The position numbers were made by a program, and so were the translations under genes. Shown here piece by piece: positions 3 to 64,000 of a stretch of 64,000 nt of DNA. The stretch comes from Dimorphilus gyrociliatus (Eukaryota; Animalia; Annelida): NCBI GenBank assembly GCA_904063045.1, contig CAJFCJ010000046.1:176028-240027 (forward strand), given 5' to 3'. The notes beneath the pieces were generated by a model. The model was not told where the DNA came from. It saw nothing but the letters and a program-made list of their open reading frames with translations, and searched no databases. Position 1 is the first letter of the stretch. Each line of letters opens with the position of its first letter.

Positions 3-2308
3 AATTCAAATGGTTGTATCGATTGTTCAGATAGTGAAATATCAAATTGTACAGATTTTCAATTGGTTAATGATGTTTGTACATGTTTACGGTGCTCATC
101 TAATTATGTATTGAAAGAGAATTTAGAATGCATTGATTGTCAAACAGGTGGTGGTGGTGCAACTGAAAATTGTGAGGAATGTTCTTTAATTGATGGAACT
201 TCAACTGTTTCTGAATGTAGTAAATGTATATCTGGATTTGGTTTAGAACCTACTTCTGCACCAGCTAAACCAAAATGTTATCAATGTCAAAATGGGTGCT
301 CAGATTGTACAGTTGATGATAGGTCAACACCACCAAATACAATTAATAGATGTACAAATTGTCTCCCAAATTATGCACTTAACAATGAGGGAACTTGCAT
401 AAAATGTCCATTAAATTGTAGTGAATGTAGAATTGATCCTGAAAATCAAAATAATACTTTATGCTTAACATTTGGCTGTATTGCAACAGCTTTGAGAGAT
501 GAAGATTTCACTTGTGAATCATGCTCTATTGATTATTGTTCAATATGTAGAAAGCATATTGATGACTCATTTGAATGTTTGCAATGTGATGCTGGTTATT
601 ATAAAGACAATACTGGAAATTGTCAAGCATGCTCAGATGGTTGCAGTTTCTGTTTAAATGGTATGACTTGTATACCACATGGCTGTAAAGAAGGATTCAT
701 TCGACATAGAATAGATGGAACATGTATCCCATGTCCTGGTGATGGTGTAGCCAGATGCTCATTCAAGAGTATAACATCTGATGAACTGGTAGCAGAATTA
801 TGTAAAAATGGCTTTAGGATTAACACTGCTAATAGTCCCACAACATGTGAAGGTAAGATATTTACTTTGATGTGTGTATATATAAGTAAATAGGTTTAAT
901 TTAGCATTTATTATCAAACAGAATGTGACCCAAATTGTAAGAAATGTGATGTAAATGGAATATCAAAATGTGATGTTGATGAATGCAAATCAGATTATTT
1001 CTTTGATTCCAGTGATAAGAAATGTTATAGAAATAATGATAATTGTATGAAAAGTACAAGACAGAATGGAAAGATTGCTTGTTCTTCTTGTAATACAAAC
1101 ATATCAGTTCTTTCTGATGGAAAATGTGTAAATTGTCCAAATCAATGTTTGGGTGGTTGTTCATTTGACAAAACAAATAACAAATTTACTTGCATTTCTT
1201 GCATTATGGAATACTATAAAACCAGGGATAATTTCTGTAAATCTTGTCCTACTGGTTGTAAGACTTGTTCATTGATTGGAGATAATGTTGAATGCACTTC
1301 CTGTTTGCCAAGTTATGGATTAAAGAAAAATGGATTATGTGAATCTTGCAATGTTGACAAATGTCACAATTGTGAAACAACTCCTGGAGAGGATTCATTA
1401 GTTTGTACATCATGTGCTGAAGCATTCTGTTTAAATTCTGAAGAATGTGGAAAATGTCCTATAAATTGTCTAGAATGTTCCCACACCAATAGATATGAAT
1501 GCACAAAATGTATGGCTGGTTATGCTAAGACACAAGATGGAACTTGTATCCCATGTCCATCAAATTGTAAAATATGTACAGCCAACTCTAATAGAGAAAT
1601 AAGATGTGTTAAATGCGTTTCTAATAAATATTCACTTCAAACCAAGACAGGACAATGTATTGTCTGTTCAGAGGCAACATTTTCACATTGTGCAACATGC
1701 AGTATAACACCAATAAATGGAAAAACAAAATGTGAAACCTGTAACATTGGATACACCCTTCAAGATGATGAAGAAGCCTGTGTTAGTTGTTCAATAGACA
1801 AATGTGATCTATGCATTCATGGAAGAGTATGTTCGGAATGTAAAGCTGGATATTATGAACATAATTATTATAGAGAATGTGCACGTGAGTAACCTAATAA
1901 TCATATTTTTGAAATTGAGAAGAAACAGAATTTTTCTTCTTCTTTTCAGAAAAATGCTTTCAATGCAAAGGAAATAAAGCTGATTGTGGAAGAGATTTAT
2001 CAAAATTCAATGACACAATTACTGATACAGCTATACAAATTGTTGACTGTTCAAGTGGAGATTGTTGGGCCTATAGACAAGAAAAATCTGGAATAGTTAC
2101 ATATGTTAGGGAATGTTCACATAGAACTTGTACTCTAGCAGCTCAAAATGAAAATTGTCAAACAGTTGAAGATAAGAAGGAATGTGAAAAATGTTGTAAA
2201 GGTGATAAATGCAATACATGGGAATTGGATGGTAAAGCAGGTGTTGGAAAAATAGCATTTGTTGATTACTTCATTATTGTTTTCAGTTTTATTTTCATTG
2301 TATTTTAA
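3..2308 (+). CDS. Cys-rich furin-like/EGF-like repeat protein ending in a Ly6/uPAR (LU) domain and GPI-anchor signal (5'-partial; exons <1-852, 922-1884, 1950-2308)
   Basis: The frame is open from position 3 with CxxC...CxxC..GY repeats. GT-AG introns 853-921 and 1885-1949 join the ORFs in frame. The last exon translates QKCFQCKG...DCWAY...RECS...CEKCCKGDKCN (LU motif CCxxDxCN), then a hydrophobic tail YFIIVFSFIFIVF*. Confidence 0.85.
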
Positions 2309-2629
2309 AAGAAAATAAACTATACTTCATTGTTAAAAAATTGTAGGAATTTCTGTTTTATACTAACAGTGTTTGTCCTTTCCAATTCATAGAACTGAAA
2401 TGTTCAACCTAGTGACAACTAGTTTTGTTCCAATCATTGTATCTCAATCTGGGAGAATCAACTTGAAACAATCTCCACTGAAACAAGTCTTACACTCCTT
2501 TAACATTGGCCACTAATGTGGTGATTTGGTGACCTTTATTTAGACTTTGCCAATAAAAAAATCTTATTTACAACATCTTCAATAAGATCATTTTATCCTT
2601 AGTTAAAAGTATCTAAATTTTTAAAATAT

Positions 2630-2875
2630 TGTACAACTTTGGTTATATTTTACATGCCATCCATCTACTCCTCAACATTGGAAGACAATTTGGTAATTTG
2701 GCAGCCTGCTGTTACGAACTCTCTACTCTGCTATTGAACTCTCATATAATTACTTGCTTAAGTATTATTATTGCAAATAAACCATTTTAATTAAAACATT
2801 TGTTTAAAAGATTTGAGTAGAACCAGTATTGTTATAATTTGCAAATGCATAAATTTGCCAAGCAACAGCAGTACA
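2630..2875 (+). mobile_element. Internally deleted solo LTR (same family as 33492-34127 and 63129-63764)
   Basis: Starts TGTACAACTTTGGTT, ends CAGTACA, and is flanked by the 4-bp TSD ATAT. It matches both ends of the 636-bp copies but lacks about 390 bp of the middle. Confidence 0.78.
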
Positions 2876-3340
2876 ATATATTAAATTTAGTGATTGTTCA
2901 TACTAGGTAGTTGGAGAATGAGCAAAGTCTGTAGAACATCCAGAAAGAGTTCAGAAGAGATATGTTTATACATGAAAGAACAACAATTTTTTAAATATGC
3001 CAATAATTCTAAATATTCAATTCACTTTGTTTTATAATTTTTTTAATTTGAATAAATAAAGATTATCTTTTCTTTTCTTTCTATCTCTCTTTTAAATTAT
3101 TGCATTATTTTGGAAAATCAGGGCCAGGAAAAGAAAGAAGATAGAAAATCTACTGCAAGTTTTGGCTTTACTTTTTAAATACCAAAAAATTGTCAATAAA
3201 TCTAACACCATAATGAAATATAGTTCATTTATTCTATTCATTTTTACATGATTTCAGGGTACTAAGTGATTAAACTTTTCTCAATAAACTCTATAGCATA
3301 CTTAGCTAATCAGCTAACTACAGTGAAATATATAGGTTTA

Positions 3341-23174: not shown

Positions 23175-23345
23175 ACAATGGAGTCATGCTCTTTATGCAA
23201 ATATGCTTTTTCATCAGGATTGTCTGAAAAGTCAGCATTATTGCAATCATAAATTTTTGTAATTTCAATTTAAAAACTAAAGGGTTAGGGTTAGGTTAGG
23301 CTGTTGTGATATATGCAAAGATATAAAACAAGAACATGTCAGATA
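23175..23345 (+). repeat. Duplicate of MULE segment 21640-21830 carrying a telomeric-repeat insertion
   Basis: Nearly colinear with 21640-21830, except that ACAAGA is replaced by GTTAGGGTTAGGTTAGG at ~23281-23300. Confidence 0.78.
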
Positions 23346-57842: not shown

Positions 57843-59612
57843 ATGGAATTAAAACATATTCGGCTTTTTCTTTCGTTTTTTCTTGTTTTTTGTTCAAGTA
57901 ATCCAAAAATTTTAACTAACAAACAAATTGCCAACAGAATAGATGAATATGTTGGTGGTCTTGTAAAATGTAGAAAATTTATTGGAGCCAATTTAGCAGT
58001 TGTCAGAAATGGAAAGCATTATTTTAACTAAAGGTTATGGTTTGGCTAATGTAAGGAGGAATGAATCTGTTACATCTAATACCAAATTTCCTATTGCCTC
58101 AATCACTAAGAGCTTTCACACTAGTAGTAGTGAAATTACTAACAGAGAAACAATAAGGAGAAAATTTTCCAAGTTAAAACTATTAAGATACCACTTTTCT
58201 TTCAGATTAAGCATCAATACAAAAGTTAAGGAATTATGGTCAGGATATACAGCCTGGTCTGGATATAGCTATCATGATTTGACACTCAGGGATTTTCTTA
58301 CTCATACAATGGGGTTCCTAGACACAATTATATTTTGGTTTTATGAGGACAGAATAGAGACAATATAGTGAATAAGATCAGATTTTTAAGACCAAATTTA
58401 TCGCCAAGAATTGAACATCAATATAATAATTTATTTTATGTATTGAGTGGTAAAATTACTGAAGAGATTGCCAACAATTGGAAAGAATGGGAAAATCTTA
58501 TTGAAGATAGTTTCTTTAAACCTATTGGAATGGAAAATTCTGGTTTCTAACATAAACAAGACAATTATAATGGTTTTGTTTCACCATATGCTCCCTCTTT
58601 TAATGGAACACATGGCAACCTTGTCAAATATCCAGCTGATGTTTGGAGGTGTGAGACTTTTTCCTCTTGTTGTTCTCATTTTTCTTATCATAAACCTTTG
58701 CATTGTACAAGACATTCTTTTCAATTACACAGAAATGTTTGCAGGGCTGGACCATCAGGTTCCATTGTTTCTACAGCAAATGATATGCGTAAATGGTTAG
58801 CAATGATTGTGAACAAAGGTGTTGCCCTGAACAGTAAAAGGATTCTATCAGAAGAAGCGATTGAACATGTATTTGCTAATGAGATATCATTTAATGATTT
58901 CATACCAGAACTATTAGGTAACAAACCAGAATTAGGTAACAGAACAAGTTATGGTCTAGGCTATTGGAATGGATATCAATCTGGTGTTGAATTTCATCAA
59001 CATGGAGGTGATTCAACTGGTTTCCATTCAACTCATATTCTTATAAGATCAATCAAATCTGGTTTTTCTTTTTCAACAAATTATGGCCAACAATCACTTG
59101 AAAGAGCAATTTTGGAAAGTTCTATTCATGATATTCTCAAGGGAAGAGATTCATCAATCTCCTTAGTAAAGGCTTGTAATTCTGCCTTACATGAGAATCA
59201 CAATTCTGATACAACATTTCCAAACAAAAGAAATATTCCAAAATATTCTGAACTATTAAAAAAACAAAGATTTAACAACGAAAATATTACAAAATATACT
59301 GGTAAATATGATAATTGGGTCTATGGATTTATCAGTATTAAAAGTACTGGTGCTGCCATCTTTCGGCTATCTCTAGATTATGGAAATATGGGACAATTTA
59401 ACCTATTACCATCTGAAAAAAATATGTATATTGGAATTTGTAAACCTGGGCCTAGTGCACTAATACCGGATATGATTTTTCATTTTGGAGATGAACAAAA
59501 TGGAAAAATGAACAAACTAGTGGCATTTTCATTTGAGATATCCGATCCACCAATATTTGAAAGAGCATTAGGTCCAGAACCACCAGTTAATCATGAAAAA
59601 TGTATTGATTAA
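57843..59612 (+). CDS. Secreted serine beta-lactamase/PBP-like family protein with C-terminal extension (frameshifted; pseudogene or assembly errors)
   Basis: Signal peptide; KGYGLA; SxxK motif IASITKSF; LRDFLTHTMG; YxN motif QYNNLFY; GPSGSIVSTANDMRKW; HGG motif QHGGD. An in-frame GT-AG intron lies at 58649-58732. Confidence 0.85.
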
Positions 59613-60038
59613 TTTATTTAGAGAATTAAAATAGTTTGGTCCTATGCCTAGAGATGTCGTTAGTTTGACTTTGAAGAAAATAATCATTGTAGTATGAGAG
59701 ATTGCCTCTTGAACTATTCTAAAAAATTCCTGAAATTAGGGAATATTGTCTAATTTTGTATTCACTTTAAAATTCAAAAAAATCCAATAGTTAACAGGAT
59801 TTTTTCCACTTCATGCTCGTTAACCTTCAGTTCAGACCTACATAAACAAAAGAATATTGTAATAAAAATTTTCCTAAAACCATAAATGCCAAAAACCTTA
59901 CATTGAACTTTAGCCTAGAAAGCAAAACCTCATTTTTTAAATCAATATTCTATTGTTATTGAAAATAGCTAACTGCTTCACAAATGATATAATATATTCC
60001 ATCTTAGTGTGTTTAATATAAATGTTCAATAATACGTA

Positions 60039-60112
60039 GCTTCCATAGCTCAATTGGTTAGAGCGTCATGCTAAAAGTGTGAATGTCCTGGATTCGACCC
60101 CCAGTGGGACCA
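60039..60112 (+). tRNA. Decayed tRNA gene, most like tRNA-Ile(AAT); the anticodon now reads AAA
   Basis: A box TAGCTCAATTGGTTAGAGC, B-box-like GATTCGACCC, acceptor stem GCTTCCA/TGGGACC with a mismatch, anticodon arm TCATG-CTAAAAG-TGTGA, and a downstream T6 terminator. Confidence 0.7.
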
Positions 60113-60228
60113 ATAATTTTTTGCTTCCAATTGACAGTGTATATAAAACAATGAGGAAATAATGTCTGAAGTGGTGTCAGCTTTTCCCCAAAATAGAATT
60201 TCACTGATTTTAATTACAACAAAAAAAG

Positions 60229-60429
60229 GGATGCGACAGAAAAACAAATGACTACTTTAACCCTAACCCTAACCCATCACTAGGTTGTACCTAACCTTTT
60301 CCAATAGCCCTAACCCTAGGAGGAGAGCCTCCTAAGTAGAATTCAATTGCTGTATTCTGCTTCCTCACCATATTTCAATCAAAAATCTATCCTTCAAATT
60401 TCTCATTCATGGACTTTTCTGTCGACCCC
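60229..60429 (+). mobile_element. Telomere-repeat MITE with perfect 9-bp TSD
   Basis: TSD CAAAAAAAG at 60220-60228 and 60430-60438; TIR GGATGCGACAGAAAA / TTTTCTGTCGACCCC; central hairpin TAGGAGG-AGAG-CCTCCTA. Confidence 0.92.
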
Positions 60430-61304
60430 CAAAAAAAGCCATAGTGATGGATTGTTTTTATTATGGTTCTTGTATACTATTCAACATGCTGAATGGAAAA
60501 TTCGAATTGCTAGTAAAAATTTAATAATGAAATCTAGATATGTAAAGATGTTGTTACAAAATGAAACGAGAGACACAGAAAGAATATTGCAAATAAAAAT
60601 TAGACATGCTTTGAGAATAAAGAAAACTGGTATCCATCACTTTGGAAATATTTTGAGTTTTGTTATAATTTTTTTGAATATCTCCAACTGCTAAATATAT
60701 TATTGATTTTAATCTTAAACTAAATCCCTTGTTCTGCGTTATTGAAATTTTATAATTAAATTGGAAATCTTAAGGTCCAAAGTAGACCTAAATGTTGTAA
60801 AATATACTGAAGTGTCCTAAAATGTTGAATGTCTTAAAAAAGCCAAAATGTCATTTCATCAGCAGAGGAAAATGTAAAAGATTGAGGTAATTGATATTTC
60901 TATTCAGGTGCAATATCTAGATCATAAACCATTTGGATCAAATACTGTAACATTAGAAATGGCTGTTAAAAAATTGCAAGTGTAACAGAAAGATTAGTAA
61001 AATTTATCAATTTAATTTTGTAGTGGTCGTGATATTCAGCAAAATATATACCCAATGATTCACGTTTATAAGTGAAATTTCCTTAATAGTCATCCTGGTA
61101 TGAAACTATTTTTAGCAAAGTACAGTTAAATTTATACTTGATTCAATTCTAGCAAGTGGAATACAGTAAGATAAGGCTTATCAAATATTTTATCTTAAAA
61201 CTGAATATATGATAACAGTATCAATATATATATATAGCTAACCTACTCATACAGTCGCTTCGATCTTTCCATTACAGATCACAGGACTGAAAAAAAAAGA
61301 GATT

Positions 61305-62090
61305 ATGACGTCACAAGGTCCTCCAGATTATTTTACTGCTGTGGTAATTTTTATTTATTGTTCAAGCTATAATATATCTGTGAAAAAATTACAAATCTCC
61401 TATTTTCTTGCTTAGGGTTATAATCCAACTATAACAAGCACCAATGATGTAAGCATATATTTACTTAATTATTAATGTTGTCCCACATTGTATAAATGTT
61501 TTTCATTCTTAGACTTCCACAATTACCTTTTGCAACAATGATAATGTAAGTCTATAAAAAATGGTCATAATATTTTATGCATACCTCTTCTATCTTTCTA
61601 TTCAATTAATAAAACAATTGAATTTTTCTTTATTAATCATTAGGGAAATTCCTTCACAATTACTAGAAGTGATCCAGTAAGTCTCTTTTTAGTAACATTT
61701 TTTTATACTAATGATGCTGATATGTTTCTCTTCTTCCCTAATCACCAATAGCAGATGCCTGATAGGGCTATAAATACAACTGGTCACGTAAGTACTCAAC
61801 TTTAAGGGAAATACAAGTGTAAATTGTTATTTTTACAGATTGCTGATGCGACTTTAAAGACAACTGGAAATGTTTGTATTTTTTAAATATTTTTGAAGAA
61901 CAGAGGCTTATTTATTTTTTACATTAAAGGTTGTTGAAACTGCTTTAGATACTTTGGCTAAGGTAACTTTCTAACATTTCATGTAATTCAATTTATTGAA
62001 AAGTATTTAACATTTTAAAATTAGATTGCTGGTTCAATAATTAAATTTCCGTTTACTGTTTTGGATGTTGCTTTCCCAAAAAAGAGTTAA
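61305..62090 (+). CDS. Micro-exon gene encoding a 100/101-aa protein of 11-residue modules (exons 61305-61343, 61416-61448, 61513-61545, 61644-61676, 61752/5-61787, 61839-61871, 61930-61962, 62025-62090)
   Basis: Seven GT-AG introns (51-98 nt; donors GTAATT, GTAAGC, GTAAGT x3, GTTTGT, GTAACT), all phase 0, give a stop-free ORF: MTSQGPPDYFTAV-GYNPTITSTND-TSTITFCNNDN-GNSFTITRSDP-(Q)MPDRAINTTGH-IADATLKTTGN-VVETALDTLAK-IAGSIIKFPFTVLDVAFPKKS*. Confidence 0.88.
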
Positions 62091-63128
62091 AGATTGAAAT
62101 GTATAGGTTAAGTACAGAAAAACTCAAAATTCAAATTTCATCTTTTAAAAATTGACACACTGTTTGTCTTGTTGAATTTTTTTCTGTTTTTTCTTCTAAG
62201 TTACTAATAAAGATATGAAAATTGTATCTAGACTGCAACTTCATTTTCATCCCAACTGAGTTCCTCAAAATGAATGTTTTACACATTTGACAAATTTGTT
62301 AAAATGCCTTTTATAAAGATAGATTAGCTGGTGGGAGCAGATGAAACTGTACCTGGTTGAAATCCTATCCAGTAAGAGTGAAACTGTAGCTGACACAACA
62401 CAAATTAAGGGAAATTTTTTAATAAAAGTCATAATTTATTATATTCAATACAAGTCAGTGTGCTGTTAAATGTCAAAAGTTGATACTCCCAAAAAAGACA
62501 ATGGCTATCTAATTAGCTTGGAGAAAGCTTTACAACTGCTCTTATAATTAGACAAAACACAAAGAGAATAAATGTTAACAGAGAGCTTTCTTTCTTTTAA
62601 TTTAGTACTATCTTGAATGAATTGTCTTTAAAGAGACTCTGATTTCAATTTCCTAAGTAAACTTTCAAGATTAGCAAAAGCCTTTAATTCAGATAAGAAA
62701 GTAAGAGTAGGCTTGTCCCAATGACTTTTATTTTCATGTTTAGGATTTAATGAAAATAGCTTTTATAAGTAAAACGCGCTATTACTTTCTGCCATAGTCA
62801 GTGCTGTTCCCATTGTTTATGGCTACCTTTATGGAAATATATAAGTGATAAATAAAGAAATTTTTAAACTATCAAATTCAATGAAATTACGCGGTGTTGT
62901 AATCAGAATATATTGGAAATGGGTATTTCTAAAACGTAAAATATACTAGCGTCTGTATGCAAGAAAAGAATTGAATTATAATTATTTACTAAAATGAATT
63001 GGTGACTGATTGCCAATTGGAAGGGCGTGACAAATTGGAAAAGACATGAATTGGAGTTAAAAATTTACCTAAAAAGTAGGAAAGATAAAAGAAATATTTA
63101 GCCATTTTCAGTACAGTTTACTTTATGA

Positions 63129-63764
63129 TGTACTGCTCTTGCTGGCAAAATTTATGCGTTTGCAAGTTATAACAATACTGATTCTGCTCGAACCTTTTAA
63201 ACAAATGTTTAAAATAAAATGGTTTATTCGCAATAATAATACTTAAGCAAGTAACAATATGAGAGTTCAATAGCAGAGTAGATAGTTCGTAATAGCAGGC
63301 TGCCAAATTACCAAACTGTCTTCCAATGTTGAGGAGTAGATGGATGGTTCCAGTCGAGGTTGTTTCCAGGTGATCTTCCCAGGTCCTTGGATCCAGATGG
63401 AAGCTCAATGCAGAATGAGAATAGTGAGGATTTATATACTTTGAGGTTTGCCTCTGACATCCAATCATCACTTTACAGTTGCCAAAATGTGTAGTTCATA
63501 TTTATGTTTAGTAACAGGATGTAACAAGGTTGAACATTTAGGAAGGTTAATTGAATTATAACTTGGCGACACCCTAGGCAAGTTAATTAAATTATAACTT
63601 GGCCAAACCTTTATTGATAATTAAAGATGAGCCTTGAAGCTGACTAATAAGACTTATGTTTGGCCAATGTTATAGCATTTTCTTGCATAGGTTTTAAGAT
63701 GTACATGTATAAGTTGCATCAAATAATACAGTTCAACCATGTAAAATATAACCAAAGTTGTACA
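63129..63764 (-). mobile_element. Solo LTR, 636 bp
   Basis: Reverse complement of 33492-34127, with TG..CA ends and TSD ATGA on both sides (63125-63128, 63765-63768). Confidence 0.9.
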
Positions 63765-64000
63765 ATGATCATCAAACAAAACCTTTTATCAGATGCATAT
63801 AAAAACCTAGATGGATACTCTTGTATGTCGAAACTAACAAATCAAAAATACATTGAAGACAGATTGCTGATAGAGCCAATCCGTACATGTAAGACAGATA
63901 AGAAAGGTCTAGGAGTTGTGATTACAACTGTGTCACCTTCTCTAGAGATCCTTGGGTAAGTCTGTAAAGGTATAGCTTCTGGTTCAGGAGCTGATTGTTG

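What the first reader, a model, noticed from the sequence alone, without database searches (positions are those of the whole stretch)
61305..62090. Hidden micro-exon gene: six consecutive phase-0 exons of 33 nt
Seen: internal exons 61416-61448, 61513-61545, 61644-61676, 61755-61787 (or 61752 via TAG/CAG), 61839-61871 and 61930-61962 are each 33 nt. They are flanked by strong GT/AG sites, and splicing yields a stop-free 100/101-aa ORF missed by the ORF track. Because all exons are symmetric, any skipping pattern keeps frame (up to 2^6 = 64 isoforms). Known: this resembles schistosome micro-exon genes (MEGs), which diversify proteins by exon skipping, but MEG products are typically secreted and of mixed exon length. 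Inference: a combinatorial, uniform-module micro-exon system in a different animal context.
Basis: partly seen in the sequence, partly recalled or inferred. Interest (0 to 1): 0.92.

Follow-up and report, generated by a model that had tools for sequence, protein, structure and literature searches.

The report
Annelid orphan gene of 33-nt exons
This is a real, expressed and already annotated small gene of the miniature annelid Dimorphilus gyrociliatus in which almost every exon encodes one 11-residue repeat; nothing here shows that the exons are shuffled by skipping, and it is not a schistosome-type micro-exon gene.

Summary
A 411-nt contig of a public run of the same organism (X2, which behaves like a transcriptome) is the fully spliced form. 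All seven GT..AG introns are removed at the predicted sites. Exon 5 uses the upstream acceptor of a TAG|CAG pair, so it is 36 nt, not 33.

The product (101 aa) is 100% identical to the public gene model DgyrCDS14543 of Dimorphilus gyrociliatus, so the gene is hidden only from an ORF track. It has no detectable relative (exhaustive phmmer over 1.84 billion representatives, Pfam, PDB).

The uniform 33 nt is best explained by exon duplication of an 11-residue (hendecad) module. Exons 5-7 are significantly alike. Residues 47-100 show a 4/7/11/15/22 hydrophobic periodicity and model as one long amphipathic helix.

It fails the MEG tests: no signal peptide, introns of 51-98 nt, no homology and a single copy. 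No skipped isoform was seen, but only contigs could be examined, so combinatorial splicing is untested rather than refuted.

The function is inferred: an intracellular, surface-binding amphipathic-helix protein.

The scan noted this same stretch twice more. It also noted other symmetric micro-exon arrays elsewhere in this genome, which I did not check.

The parts
61225..61236 (+). TATA-like run (TATATA twice), about 30-40 nt upstream of the first transcribed base seen
   Evidence: Pattern scan. The spliced contig starts at 61266. Its role as a promoter is inferred.
61266..61343 (+). Exon 1: 5' UTR from 61266 or earlier, plus CDS 61305-61343 (MTSQGPPDYFTAV, with a PPxY motif at residues 6-9)
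   Evidence: There is an in-frame TAA upstream at 61239 and no upstream ATG. The AG at 61276-61277 is not used in the contig.
61416..61448 (+). Exon 2, 33 nt, GYNPTITSTND
   Evidence: Junctions 61343/61416 and 61448/61513 are present in the X2 contig.
61513..61545 (+). Exon 3, 33 nt, TSTITFCNNDN
61644..61676 (+). Exon 4, 33 nt, GNSFTITRSDP
61752..61787 (+). Exon 5, 36 nt as expressed (Q+MPDRAINTTGH). It would be 33 nt from 61755 if the downstream AG of the TAG|CAG tandem acceptor (61749-61754) were used.
   Evidence: The joint 61676->61752 and the identity of the CDS to P0001 show the 36-nt form. The 33-nt form was not observed.
61839..61871 (+). Exon 6, 33 nt, IADATLKTTGN. It matches exon 5 at 23 of 33 bases. 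Its donor GTTTGT is the weakest of the seven.
61930..61962 (+). Exon 7, 33 nt, VVETALDTLAK. It matches exon 6 at 18 of 33 bases.
62025..62156 (+). Exon 8: CDS 62025-62090 (66 nt, two fused 33-nt units, IAGSIIKFPFT+VLDVAFPKKS+TAA), then 3' UTR to at least 62156
   Evidence: The hendecad register continues through it.
62206..62211 (+). AATAAA, the likely polyadenylation signal
   Evidence: Its use is inferred, because the contig ends at 62156.

Best explanation
This is a self-contained, lineage-restricted gene of Dimorphilus gyrociliatus (public model DgyrCDS14543). It has a TATA-like element, a 5' UTR of about 40 nt, eight exons, seven introns of 51-98 nt and an AATAAA signal. As far as can be seen, it is spliced with every exon included. 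The exons are uniformly 33 nt because each one encodes one 11-residue (hendecad) module. The array grew by tandem duplication of a phase-0 exon: exons 5-7 are still recognisably alike, and the last exon holds two fused units. Eleven residues make three turns of a 3-11 helix, so any whole number of such exons keeps both the reading frame and the helical face. That is a sufficient reason for the uniform size, and no splicing diversity is needed to explain it. The 101-aa product has no signal peptide. It has an N-terminal PPxY motif, then three Thr/Asn-rich modules that are probably disordered, then an amphipathic 11/3-periodic helix of about 47 residues (about 50-96). Inferred function: an intracellular protein that is disordered in solution and folds its C-terminal helix onto a lipid or membrane surface, as synucleins, perilipins and exchangeable apolipoproteins do. 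The PPxY motif could recruit a WW-domain protein. Shown: the gene structure, its expression and splicing, its orphan status, the hendecad periodicity and the exon paralogy. Inferred: constitutive inclusion, helix-on-surface binding and any role of PPxY.
For: Spliced 411-nt contig with all seven junctions and no mismatches; no such joints in the 100x DNA run. X2 has zero depth in introns and intergenic DNA, so it behaves as cDNA. The CDS translates exactly to P0001, DgyrCDS14543. The gene call has the same range and is separate from its neighbours. The other two frames of the spliced mRNA hold 6 and 12 stops. GC is 0.36 in exons and 0.23 in introns. Exons 5/6 match at 23 of 33 bases (p<0.0005), 6/7 at 18 of 33 and 5/7 at 17 of 33. 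The introns show no similarity. Hydrophobicity autocorrelation of residues 47-100 peaks at lags 4, 7, 11, 15 and 22 (z 2-3). Residue-class similarity has p=0.0013 at lag 11 and p<0.0003 at lag 22. The hydrophobic moment is 0.49 against 0.32 in shuffles, p about 0.02. AlphaFold2 models residues 47-101 on their own as one helix (50-96) with mean pLDDT 75. 11-mer repeats forming lipid-dependent 3-11 helices are established for perilipins, apolipoproteins and alpha-synuclein, and PLIN4 repeats are rich in Thr, Gly and Val (PMC5889406). Weak leads only: the nearest Atlas feature clusters of the C-terminal half are CsmB/CsmC chlorosome envelope proteins, phasin, synuclein and Rv1893, all scoring below 0.8.
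Against: No relative exists, so conservation and selection cannot be measured. The full-length model is poor: pLDDT 44.5, with a helix only at 73-81. The helix holds Gly and Pro at module borders. It spans only about 47 residues, and a 66-residue PLIN4 fragment was too short to bind lipid droplets. The moment test is only p about 0.02. PPxY is a four-residue motif picked out after the fact. 'Constitutive' rests on assembled contigs, which drop rare isoforms. Differences between exons 5 and 6 are mostly non-synonymous (my reading), which gives no sign of strong constraint on each residue.
Confidence: 0.6

Rival explanations
1. Combinatorial cassette: the six symmetric exons are skipped independently, giving up to 64 in-frame isoforms that differ in module number. 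This would resemble schistosome MEGs or the 5' mini-exons of fast troponin T.
For: All internal exons and both NAGNAG choices keep the frame. The exon 6 donor GTTTGT and the exon 7 acceptor are weaker than the rest. Removing whole hendecads would shorten the helix without breaking its face. Contigs cannot exclude minor isoforms (tool note).
Against: Only the all-inclusive form was recovered, and no second spliced contig was laid. No shorter isoform is in the protein collections. Five of seven donors start GTAAG or GTAAT, and the introns are 51-98 nt. In this genome splicing is reported to work best on short introns. By general knowledge that favours intron definition, where skipping is uncommon. 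Symmetry follows from exon duplication and needs no selection for skipping.
Confidence: 0.1
2. Young orphan or proto-gene: it is transcribed and spliced, and perhaps translated, but its product is a largely disordered peptide with no selected molecular function. The repeat pattern is only the residue of recent exon duplication.
For: No homolog anywhere. Single copy in the window. Low-complexity Thr/Asn-rich N-terminal half. Low-confidence full-length model. Mostly non-synonymous differences between the paralogous exons.
Against: An eight-exon frame stays open in a 30% GC genome while the other frames carry 6 and 12 stops. The introns have diverged beyond recognition while exons 5-7 keep both similarity and the hydrophobic register, which continues into exon 8. 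Exon GC is well above intron GC. The contig's word depth of 21 matches or exceeds that of the neighbouring gene's contig, though this is a weak measure.
Confidence: 0.22
3. Hendecad coiled coil: the C-terminal 11-residue repeats drive self-association into a bundle of nearly straight helices, as hendecad coiled coils do, rather than binding lipid. The protein would then be a small oligomeric scaffold.
For: The same 4/7/11 periodicity and long single helix fit hendecad coiled coils as well. About 5 of 11 positions are hydrophobic (1, 2, 5, 6, 9), which is a wide face.
Against: There are only about four repeats. Gly and Pro sit at module borders. Thr and Ala lie on the apolar face, as in lipid-binding 11-mers. 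No multimer prediction could be run.
Confidence: 0.06
4. Not an independent gene: the exons belong to a longer transcript of a neighbouring gene, or an upstream exon that supplies a signal peptide has been missed.
For: The frame stays open upstream to 61242, and an AG at 61276-61277 lies in frame.
Against: The contig runs colinear with the genome from 61266, across that AG. There is an in-frame TAA at 61239 and a TATA-like run at 61225-61236. X2 depth is zero from 59642 to about 61200, apart from one repeat-like bin, and zero again after 62229. The public annotation calls a separate 101-aa gene.
Confidence: 0.02

Closest known systems
Schistosome micro-exon genes (MEGs)
   Same: Most of the coding sequence lies in consecutive, symmetric micro-exons whose lengths are multiples of three, between longer terminal exons. 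The product is small, probably disordered and taxon-restricted. Gene finders that rely on ORFs overlook it.
   Different: MEGs have 10-20 exons of 6-81 bp (mostly 15 bp), introns of 0.1-5 kb, a constant N-terminal signal peptide, secreted products, multigene families and documented splice isoforms (PMC10526429). Here the exons are a uniform 33/36 nt and the introns are 51-98 nt. There is no signal peptide, the gene is a singleton, only one isoform was seen, the host is a free-living annelid, and there is no sequence similarity.
11-mer-repeat amphipathic-helix proteins (alpha-synuclein, perilipins including PLIN4, exchangeable apolipoproteins, group 3 LEA proteins)
   Same: An 11-residue periodicity with a 3-4-4 hydrophobic spacing that gives a 3-11 helix. 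Thr, Gly and Ala are frequent. The protein is predicted to be unfolded except as one long helix (PMC5889406).
   Different: It matches no Pfam family, even at E<=10. It has only about 4-5 repeats. From my own knowledge, the repeats in those genes lie inside large exons; apolipoprotein genes are classically described as built from 11-codon (33-nt) repeats within one exon. Here each repeat is its own exon.
Exon-per-repeat genes such as fibrillar collagens (54-bp exons)
   Same: Runs of equal-sized phase-0 exons, each encoding a whole number of structural repeats. They are explained by duplication of a primordial exon (textbook knowledge, not tested here).
   Different: The unit is 33 nt (one hendecad) instead of 54 bp (six Gly-X-Y triplets). 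The gene is tiny, and its product is helical or disordered rather than a triple helix.
Fast skeletal troponin T 5' mini-exon cassette
   Same: Several adjacent small symmetric exons that could in principle be combined freely; this is the classic case with up to 64 isoforms (my own knowledge).
   Different: There the combinatorial isoforms are documented, the exons differ in size, and they sit inside a conserved larger gene. Here no alternative isoform was seen.

Membership tests
Schistosome MEG | Bulk of the CDS in consecutive symmetric micro-exons between longer terminal exons | tested here: met
   Six exons of 33/36 nt make up 201 of 306 coding nt, and all are in phase 0.
Schistosome MEG | N-terminal signal peptide and a secreted product | tested here: not met
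   The N-terminus MTSQGPPDYFTAVGYNPT has no hydrophobic core; mean hydrophobicity of residues 1-22 is 0.16. The transcript has no upstream ATG or exon. No dedicated signal-peptide predictor was available.
Schistosome MEG | Long introns (0.1-5 kb) between the micro-exons | tested here: not met
   The introns are 72, 64, 98, 75, 51, 58 and 62 nt. The criterion comes from PMC10526429.
Schistosome MEG | Protein variants produced by exon skipping | tested here: inconclusive
   Only the full-inclusion contig was found. Contigs drop rare variants, and no raw RNA reads were obtainable.
Schistosome MEG | Sequence relationship to a MEG family, or membership of a multigene family | tested here: not met
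   Exhaustive phmmer found only the protein itself. The word search found one candidate, itself. There is no paralog in the window.
11-mer amphipathic-helix lipid-binding proteins (synuclein / perilipin / apolipoprotein / LEA_4) | 11-residue periodicity of hydrophobic positions compatible with a 3-11 helix | tested here: met
   Autocorrelation peaks at lags 4, 7, 11, 15 and 22. Lag-11 similarity has p=0.0013 and lag-22 p<0.0003. AF2 models a single helix over residues 50-96 with pLDDT 75.
11-mer amphipathic-helix lipid-binding proteins (synuclein / perilipin / apolipoprotein / LEA_4) | Profile match to the family models | tested here: not met
   Pfam returned 0 families at E<=10. PDB sequences gave nothing below E 0.7. 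The Atlas synuclein cluster scored 0.62-0.64, which is chance level.
11-mer amphipathic-helix lipid-binding proteins (synuclein / perilipin / apolipoprotein / LEA_4) | Lipid-dependent folding and binding to membranes or droplets | not testable with these tools
   This needs circular dichroism or flotation with liposomes or emulsions, or localisation in cells.
Combinatorial mini-exon cassette (troponin T type) | Several isoforms with different subsets of the cassette exons | tested here: inconclusive
   One isoform was seen. No other product is in the databases.

The most novel reading that the evidence does not exclude
A non-secreted, MEG-like cassette in a free-living annelid: the hendecad exons are skipped in a regulated way, so the length of an amphipathic helix, and with it the strength of surface binding, is set in steps of exactly three helical turns by splicing. 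The same genome may hold a wider class of such exon-per-module genes; earlier notes of this scan report other symmetric micro-exon arrays, which I did not check.
Probability: 0.08. Interest if true: 0.7.

Novelty: new variant of a known kind. Interest (0 to 1): 0.35.

Why it matters
The gene is a clean, very small example of how a repeat protein can grow by duplicating one phase-0 exon. One exon equals one hendecad, which equals three helical turns. The exon borders coincide with the structural repeat, and the whole gene fits in 900 bp. Textbook cases of exon-sized repeats (collagen, and the 11-codon units of apolipoproteins) are large or have lost their introns. This one keeps an intron between almost every unit, in a genome known for keeping ancestral gene structure while shrinking. 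If skipping does occur, the gene would be a simple system for studying helix-length tuning by splicing. If it does not, the gene is an annotated orphan with an elegant but explicable architecture. It is also a practical reminder that ORF-based screens miss such genes, although the transcript-based public annotation of this genome did not.

Tried and rejected
- RNA runs: a search for RNA runs holding the stretch listed none. A search of kind 'any' gave three runs labelled 'DNA?'. One of them (X2) proved to carry the spliced form.
- Homology: the word-based search, exhaustive phmmer, Pfam at E<=10 and PDB sequences found only the protein itself or noise.
- ESM Atlas feature and structure neighbours all scored below the level at which shuffled proteins also score. 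I kept them only as leads.
- The full-length AlphaFold2 model has pLDDT 44.5. I did not use it for fold search, because a low-confidence model or a single helix gives meaningless matches.
- tblastn of the peptide against the window found no paralog.
- Intron-intron alignments showed no similarity.
- Rfam on 60000-64000 found nothing.
- Expression tables: supplements of the genome paper and of the annelid life-cycle paper were searched for the gene id. The first uses a different id series (DgyrG...) and the second holds no D. gyrociliatus ids, so no expression value could be assigned. No paper mentions DgyrCDS14543.
- Bdelloid rotifer origin, my early guess, is unlikely: the inserted repeat at 23281-23300 is TTAGGG-like (by my own knowledge bdelloids carry a different repeat). 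The protein hit then settled the organism.
- Ice-binding beta-solenoid reading of the T-I-T motifs: rejected. There are only three modules, beta periodicity is not above shuffles (95% of shuffles reach it), and there is no signal peptide.

Full report
**What is in the sequence.**
- An ATG exon lies at 61305-61343.
- Six stop-free 33-nt segments follow: 61416-61448, 61513-61545, 61644-61676, 61755-61787, 61839-61871 and 61930-61962.
- A terminal exon lies at 62025-62090 and ends in TAA.
- Each segment sits between an AG, most behind a T-rich tract, and a GT. Five of the seven donors start GTAAG or GTAAT.
- The introns are 51-98 nt.
- Joined, the segments give 303 nt (100 aa), or 306 nt (101 aa) if exon 5 starts at 61752, the upstream AG of a TAG|CAG pair.

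**Is it more than chance?**
- The bare pattern (AG, 33 stop-free nt, GT, gaps of 40-300) is not strong evidence on its own. Chains of six or more appeared in 6 of 60 block-shuffled windows.
- With the donor GTAAG required, the window holds five hits, and four of them are consecutive here. In 300 shuffles no chain exceeded two. Among exon lengths of 15-63 nt, only 33 gives any chain.
- The spliced frame is open over 101 codons, while the other two frames hold 6 and 12 stops.
- GC is 0.36 in the exons and 0.23 in the introns.

**Expression and splicing.** No run labelled RNA could be listed. Three runs of one 2020 study were listed as 'DNA?'.
- Run X1 covers the whole region at about 100x and is colinear with the genome.
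- Run X2 comes from the same organism and a different sample, with 42 Mb of contigs. It has zero depth over introns and intergenic DNA and covers only gene-like pieces.
- X2 holds a 411-nt contig that matches 61266-62156 without a mismatch and skips exactly seven GT..AG intervals.
- X1 has none of these joints, so the joined form is not a retrocopy in the DNA.
- I therefore treat X2 as cDNA and the gene as transcribed and spliced.
- No contig with a skipped exon was laid. Contigs drop rare variants, so this shows the main form only.

**Identity.**
- The 101-aa translation is 100% identical over its full length to a public protein named DgyrCDS14543 of Dimorphilus gyrociliatus (identity re-checked).
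- The gene call on contig CAJFCJ010000046.1 of assembly GCA_904063045.1 spans exactly the finding's range. It is separate from its neighbours.
- The genome paper reports a 73.8-Mb genome, a median intron of 66 bp, splicing that works best on short introns, and no trans-splicing or operons (PMC7854359). All of this fits the locus.
- The gene is therefore hidden only from an ORF track.
- The locus has a TATA-like run at 61225-61236, an in-frame TAA at 61239, no upstream ATG, and an AATAAA at 62206. Together these bound a compact independent unit.

**Relatives.** None were found.
- The word-indexed search of 5.8 billion proteins had a single candidate, the protein itself.
- Exhaustive phmmer against 1.84 billion cluster representatives returned only the protein itself.
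- Pfam gave no family at E<=10.
- PDB sequences gave nothing below E 0.7.
- The window holds no paralog.
- The run of the study's second organism holds nothing at 85% identity or more beyond 20-nt scraps.
- A caveat applies: genes like this are easily missed by gene finders in other genomes, so absence from predicted proteomes is weak evidence of absence in nature.

**Why 33 nt?** In 11-residue register the product reads:
- MTSQGPPDYFTAV (13-residue N-terminal segment from exon 1)
- GYNPTITSTND
- TSTITFCNNDN
- GNSFTITRSDP
- (Q)MPDRAINTTGH
- IADATLKTTGN
- VVETALDTLAK
- IAGSIIKFPFT
- VLDVAFPKKS

The evidence that these are duplicated modules is as follows.
- Exons 5 and 6 match at 23 of 33 bases (p<0.0005). 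Exons 6/7 match at 18 of 33 and 5/7 at 17 of 33 (p about 0.001). The introns show no similarity.
- In residues 47-100, hydrophobicity autocorrelates at lags 4, 7, 11, 15 and 22. This is the 3-4-4 signature of an 11/3 helix.
- Residue classes repeat at lag 11 (p=0.0013) and at lag 22 (p<0.0003). No other lag but 7 (p=0.013), itself part of the 3-4-4 signature, stands out.
- Positions 1, 2, 5, 6 and 9 are apolar. Position 3 is acidic in four of five modules. Positions 8-10 read T-T-G in exons 5 and 6.
- The last exon is 66 nt and carries two modules in register.
- The three N-terminal modules share a T-I-T core but repeat only weakly (lag 11 p=0.07).

The simplest account is serial duplication of one phase-0 exon that encodes one hendecad. 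This happened long enough ago for the introns to randomise. Symmetry and equal length follow automatically.

**What the product may do.**
- There is no signal peptide and no transmembrane stretch.
- The full-length single-sequence AlphaFold2 model is poor, with pLDDT 44.5.
- Residues 47-101 on their own model as one uninterrupted helix (50-96) with mean pLDDT 75.
- The hydrophobic moment of this half is 0.49, against 0.32 in shuffles (p about 0.02).
- 11-mer repeats that fold into 3-11 helices on contact with lipid are established for apolipoproteins, alpha-synuclein and perilipins. PLIN4 repeats are likewise rich in Thr, Gly and Val (PMC5889406).
- The nearest Atlas feature clusters of the C-terminal half are small proteins that, to my knowledge, mostly bind or coat lipid surfaces (chlorosome CsmB/CsmC, phasin, synuclein). 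Their scores of 0.6-0.76 are what shuffled proteins also reach, so they are leads only.
- I therefore commit, at about 0.3, to an intracellular protein whose C-terminal helix folds on a membrane or droplet surface. The N-terminal PPxY (residues 6-9) is a possible WW-domain handle.
- A hendecad coiled coil, or no selected function at all, remain live alternatives.

**Comparison with MEGs and the combinatorial claim.** MEGs are defined by 10-20 exons of 6-81 bp (mostly 15 bp), introns of 0.1-5 kb, a constant signal peptide and secreted, alternatively spliced products (PMC10526429).
- This gene shares the symmetric micro-exons and the orphan status.
- It lacks the signal peptide, the long introns, the family and any sequence similarity, so it is not a MEG.
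- The 64-isoform figure is arithmetic. The one observed form includes everything.
- Strong donors and very short introns argue for efficient constitutive removal.
- I put regulated skipping at about 0.1. It is testable in a day with the public RNA-seq, which I could not reach.

**Earlier notes of this scan.**
- The same stretch was noted twice more. Note s1-082273 describes the PPxY motif, Thr-rich modules and 11-mer amphipathic modules. My periodicity and helix tests agree with its C-terminal part, and its 'strand' reading got only low-confidence support. Note s1-083990 describes the 33-nt unit in the terminal exons and the NAGNAG site. The NAGNAG site is used at its upstream AG. The 3' exon is indeed 2x33 nt. 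The proposed 5' extension from 61278 is not spliced in the contig.
- Notes s1-080730 and s1-083588 report other arrays of symmetric micro-exons elsewhere in this genome. I could not check them. If they are real, exon-per-module genes recur in this genome.

**Verdict.** The architecture is an uncommon but explicable variant of exon-per-repeat genes. The MEG-like combinatorial interpretation is unsupported. Interest is moderate to low (0.35).

Noticed in passing
window 61219-61391: A second X2 contig matches only this 173-nt piece (TATA run, 5' UTR, exon 1 and the first 48 nt of intron 1) at 95-99% identity. It continues on both sides into about 255 nt unlike the window. The DNA run X1 shows no second copy of this piece. 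It could be an assembly chimera at the low-complexity TATATA run, an allele, or a transcribed partial duplicate.
   Followed up: partly
window 63025-63820: A very high-copy interspersed repeat. Summed contig depth reaches about 288,000 in X1, against about 100 for unique DNA, and up to about 3,300 in X2. There are many variants and internal joints. It has no Rfam match and only a 35-nt tandem pair at 63539-63609.
   Followed up: partly
window 58373-59615: The upstream gene has a second version about 9% divergent. It is called as a 269-aa protein at 58803-59612; the ORF translation looked beta-lactamase-like to me, but no Pfam family is on record for it and I ran no search. The second version is present in the DNA run at similar depth, and it is the one represented in the X2 contig (77 differences over 874 nt). 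It may be a paralog or a divergent haplotype.
   Followed up: no
window 23281-23300: A short TTAGGG-like run (GGGTTAGGGTTAGGTTAGG) lies inside unique sequence. I used it only as a hint to the organism. It was already noted by the scan (s1-083988).
   Followed up: no
window 60040-60437: DNA depth rises to 1,500-3,000 in X1 with some X2 signal. This looks like another repeated element between the upstream gene and the micro-exon gene.
   Followed up: no
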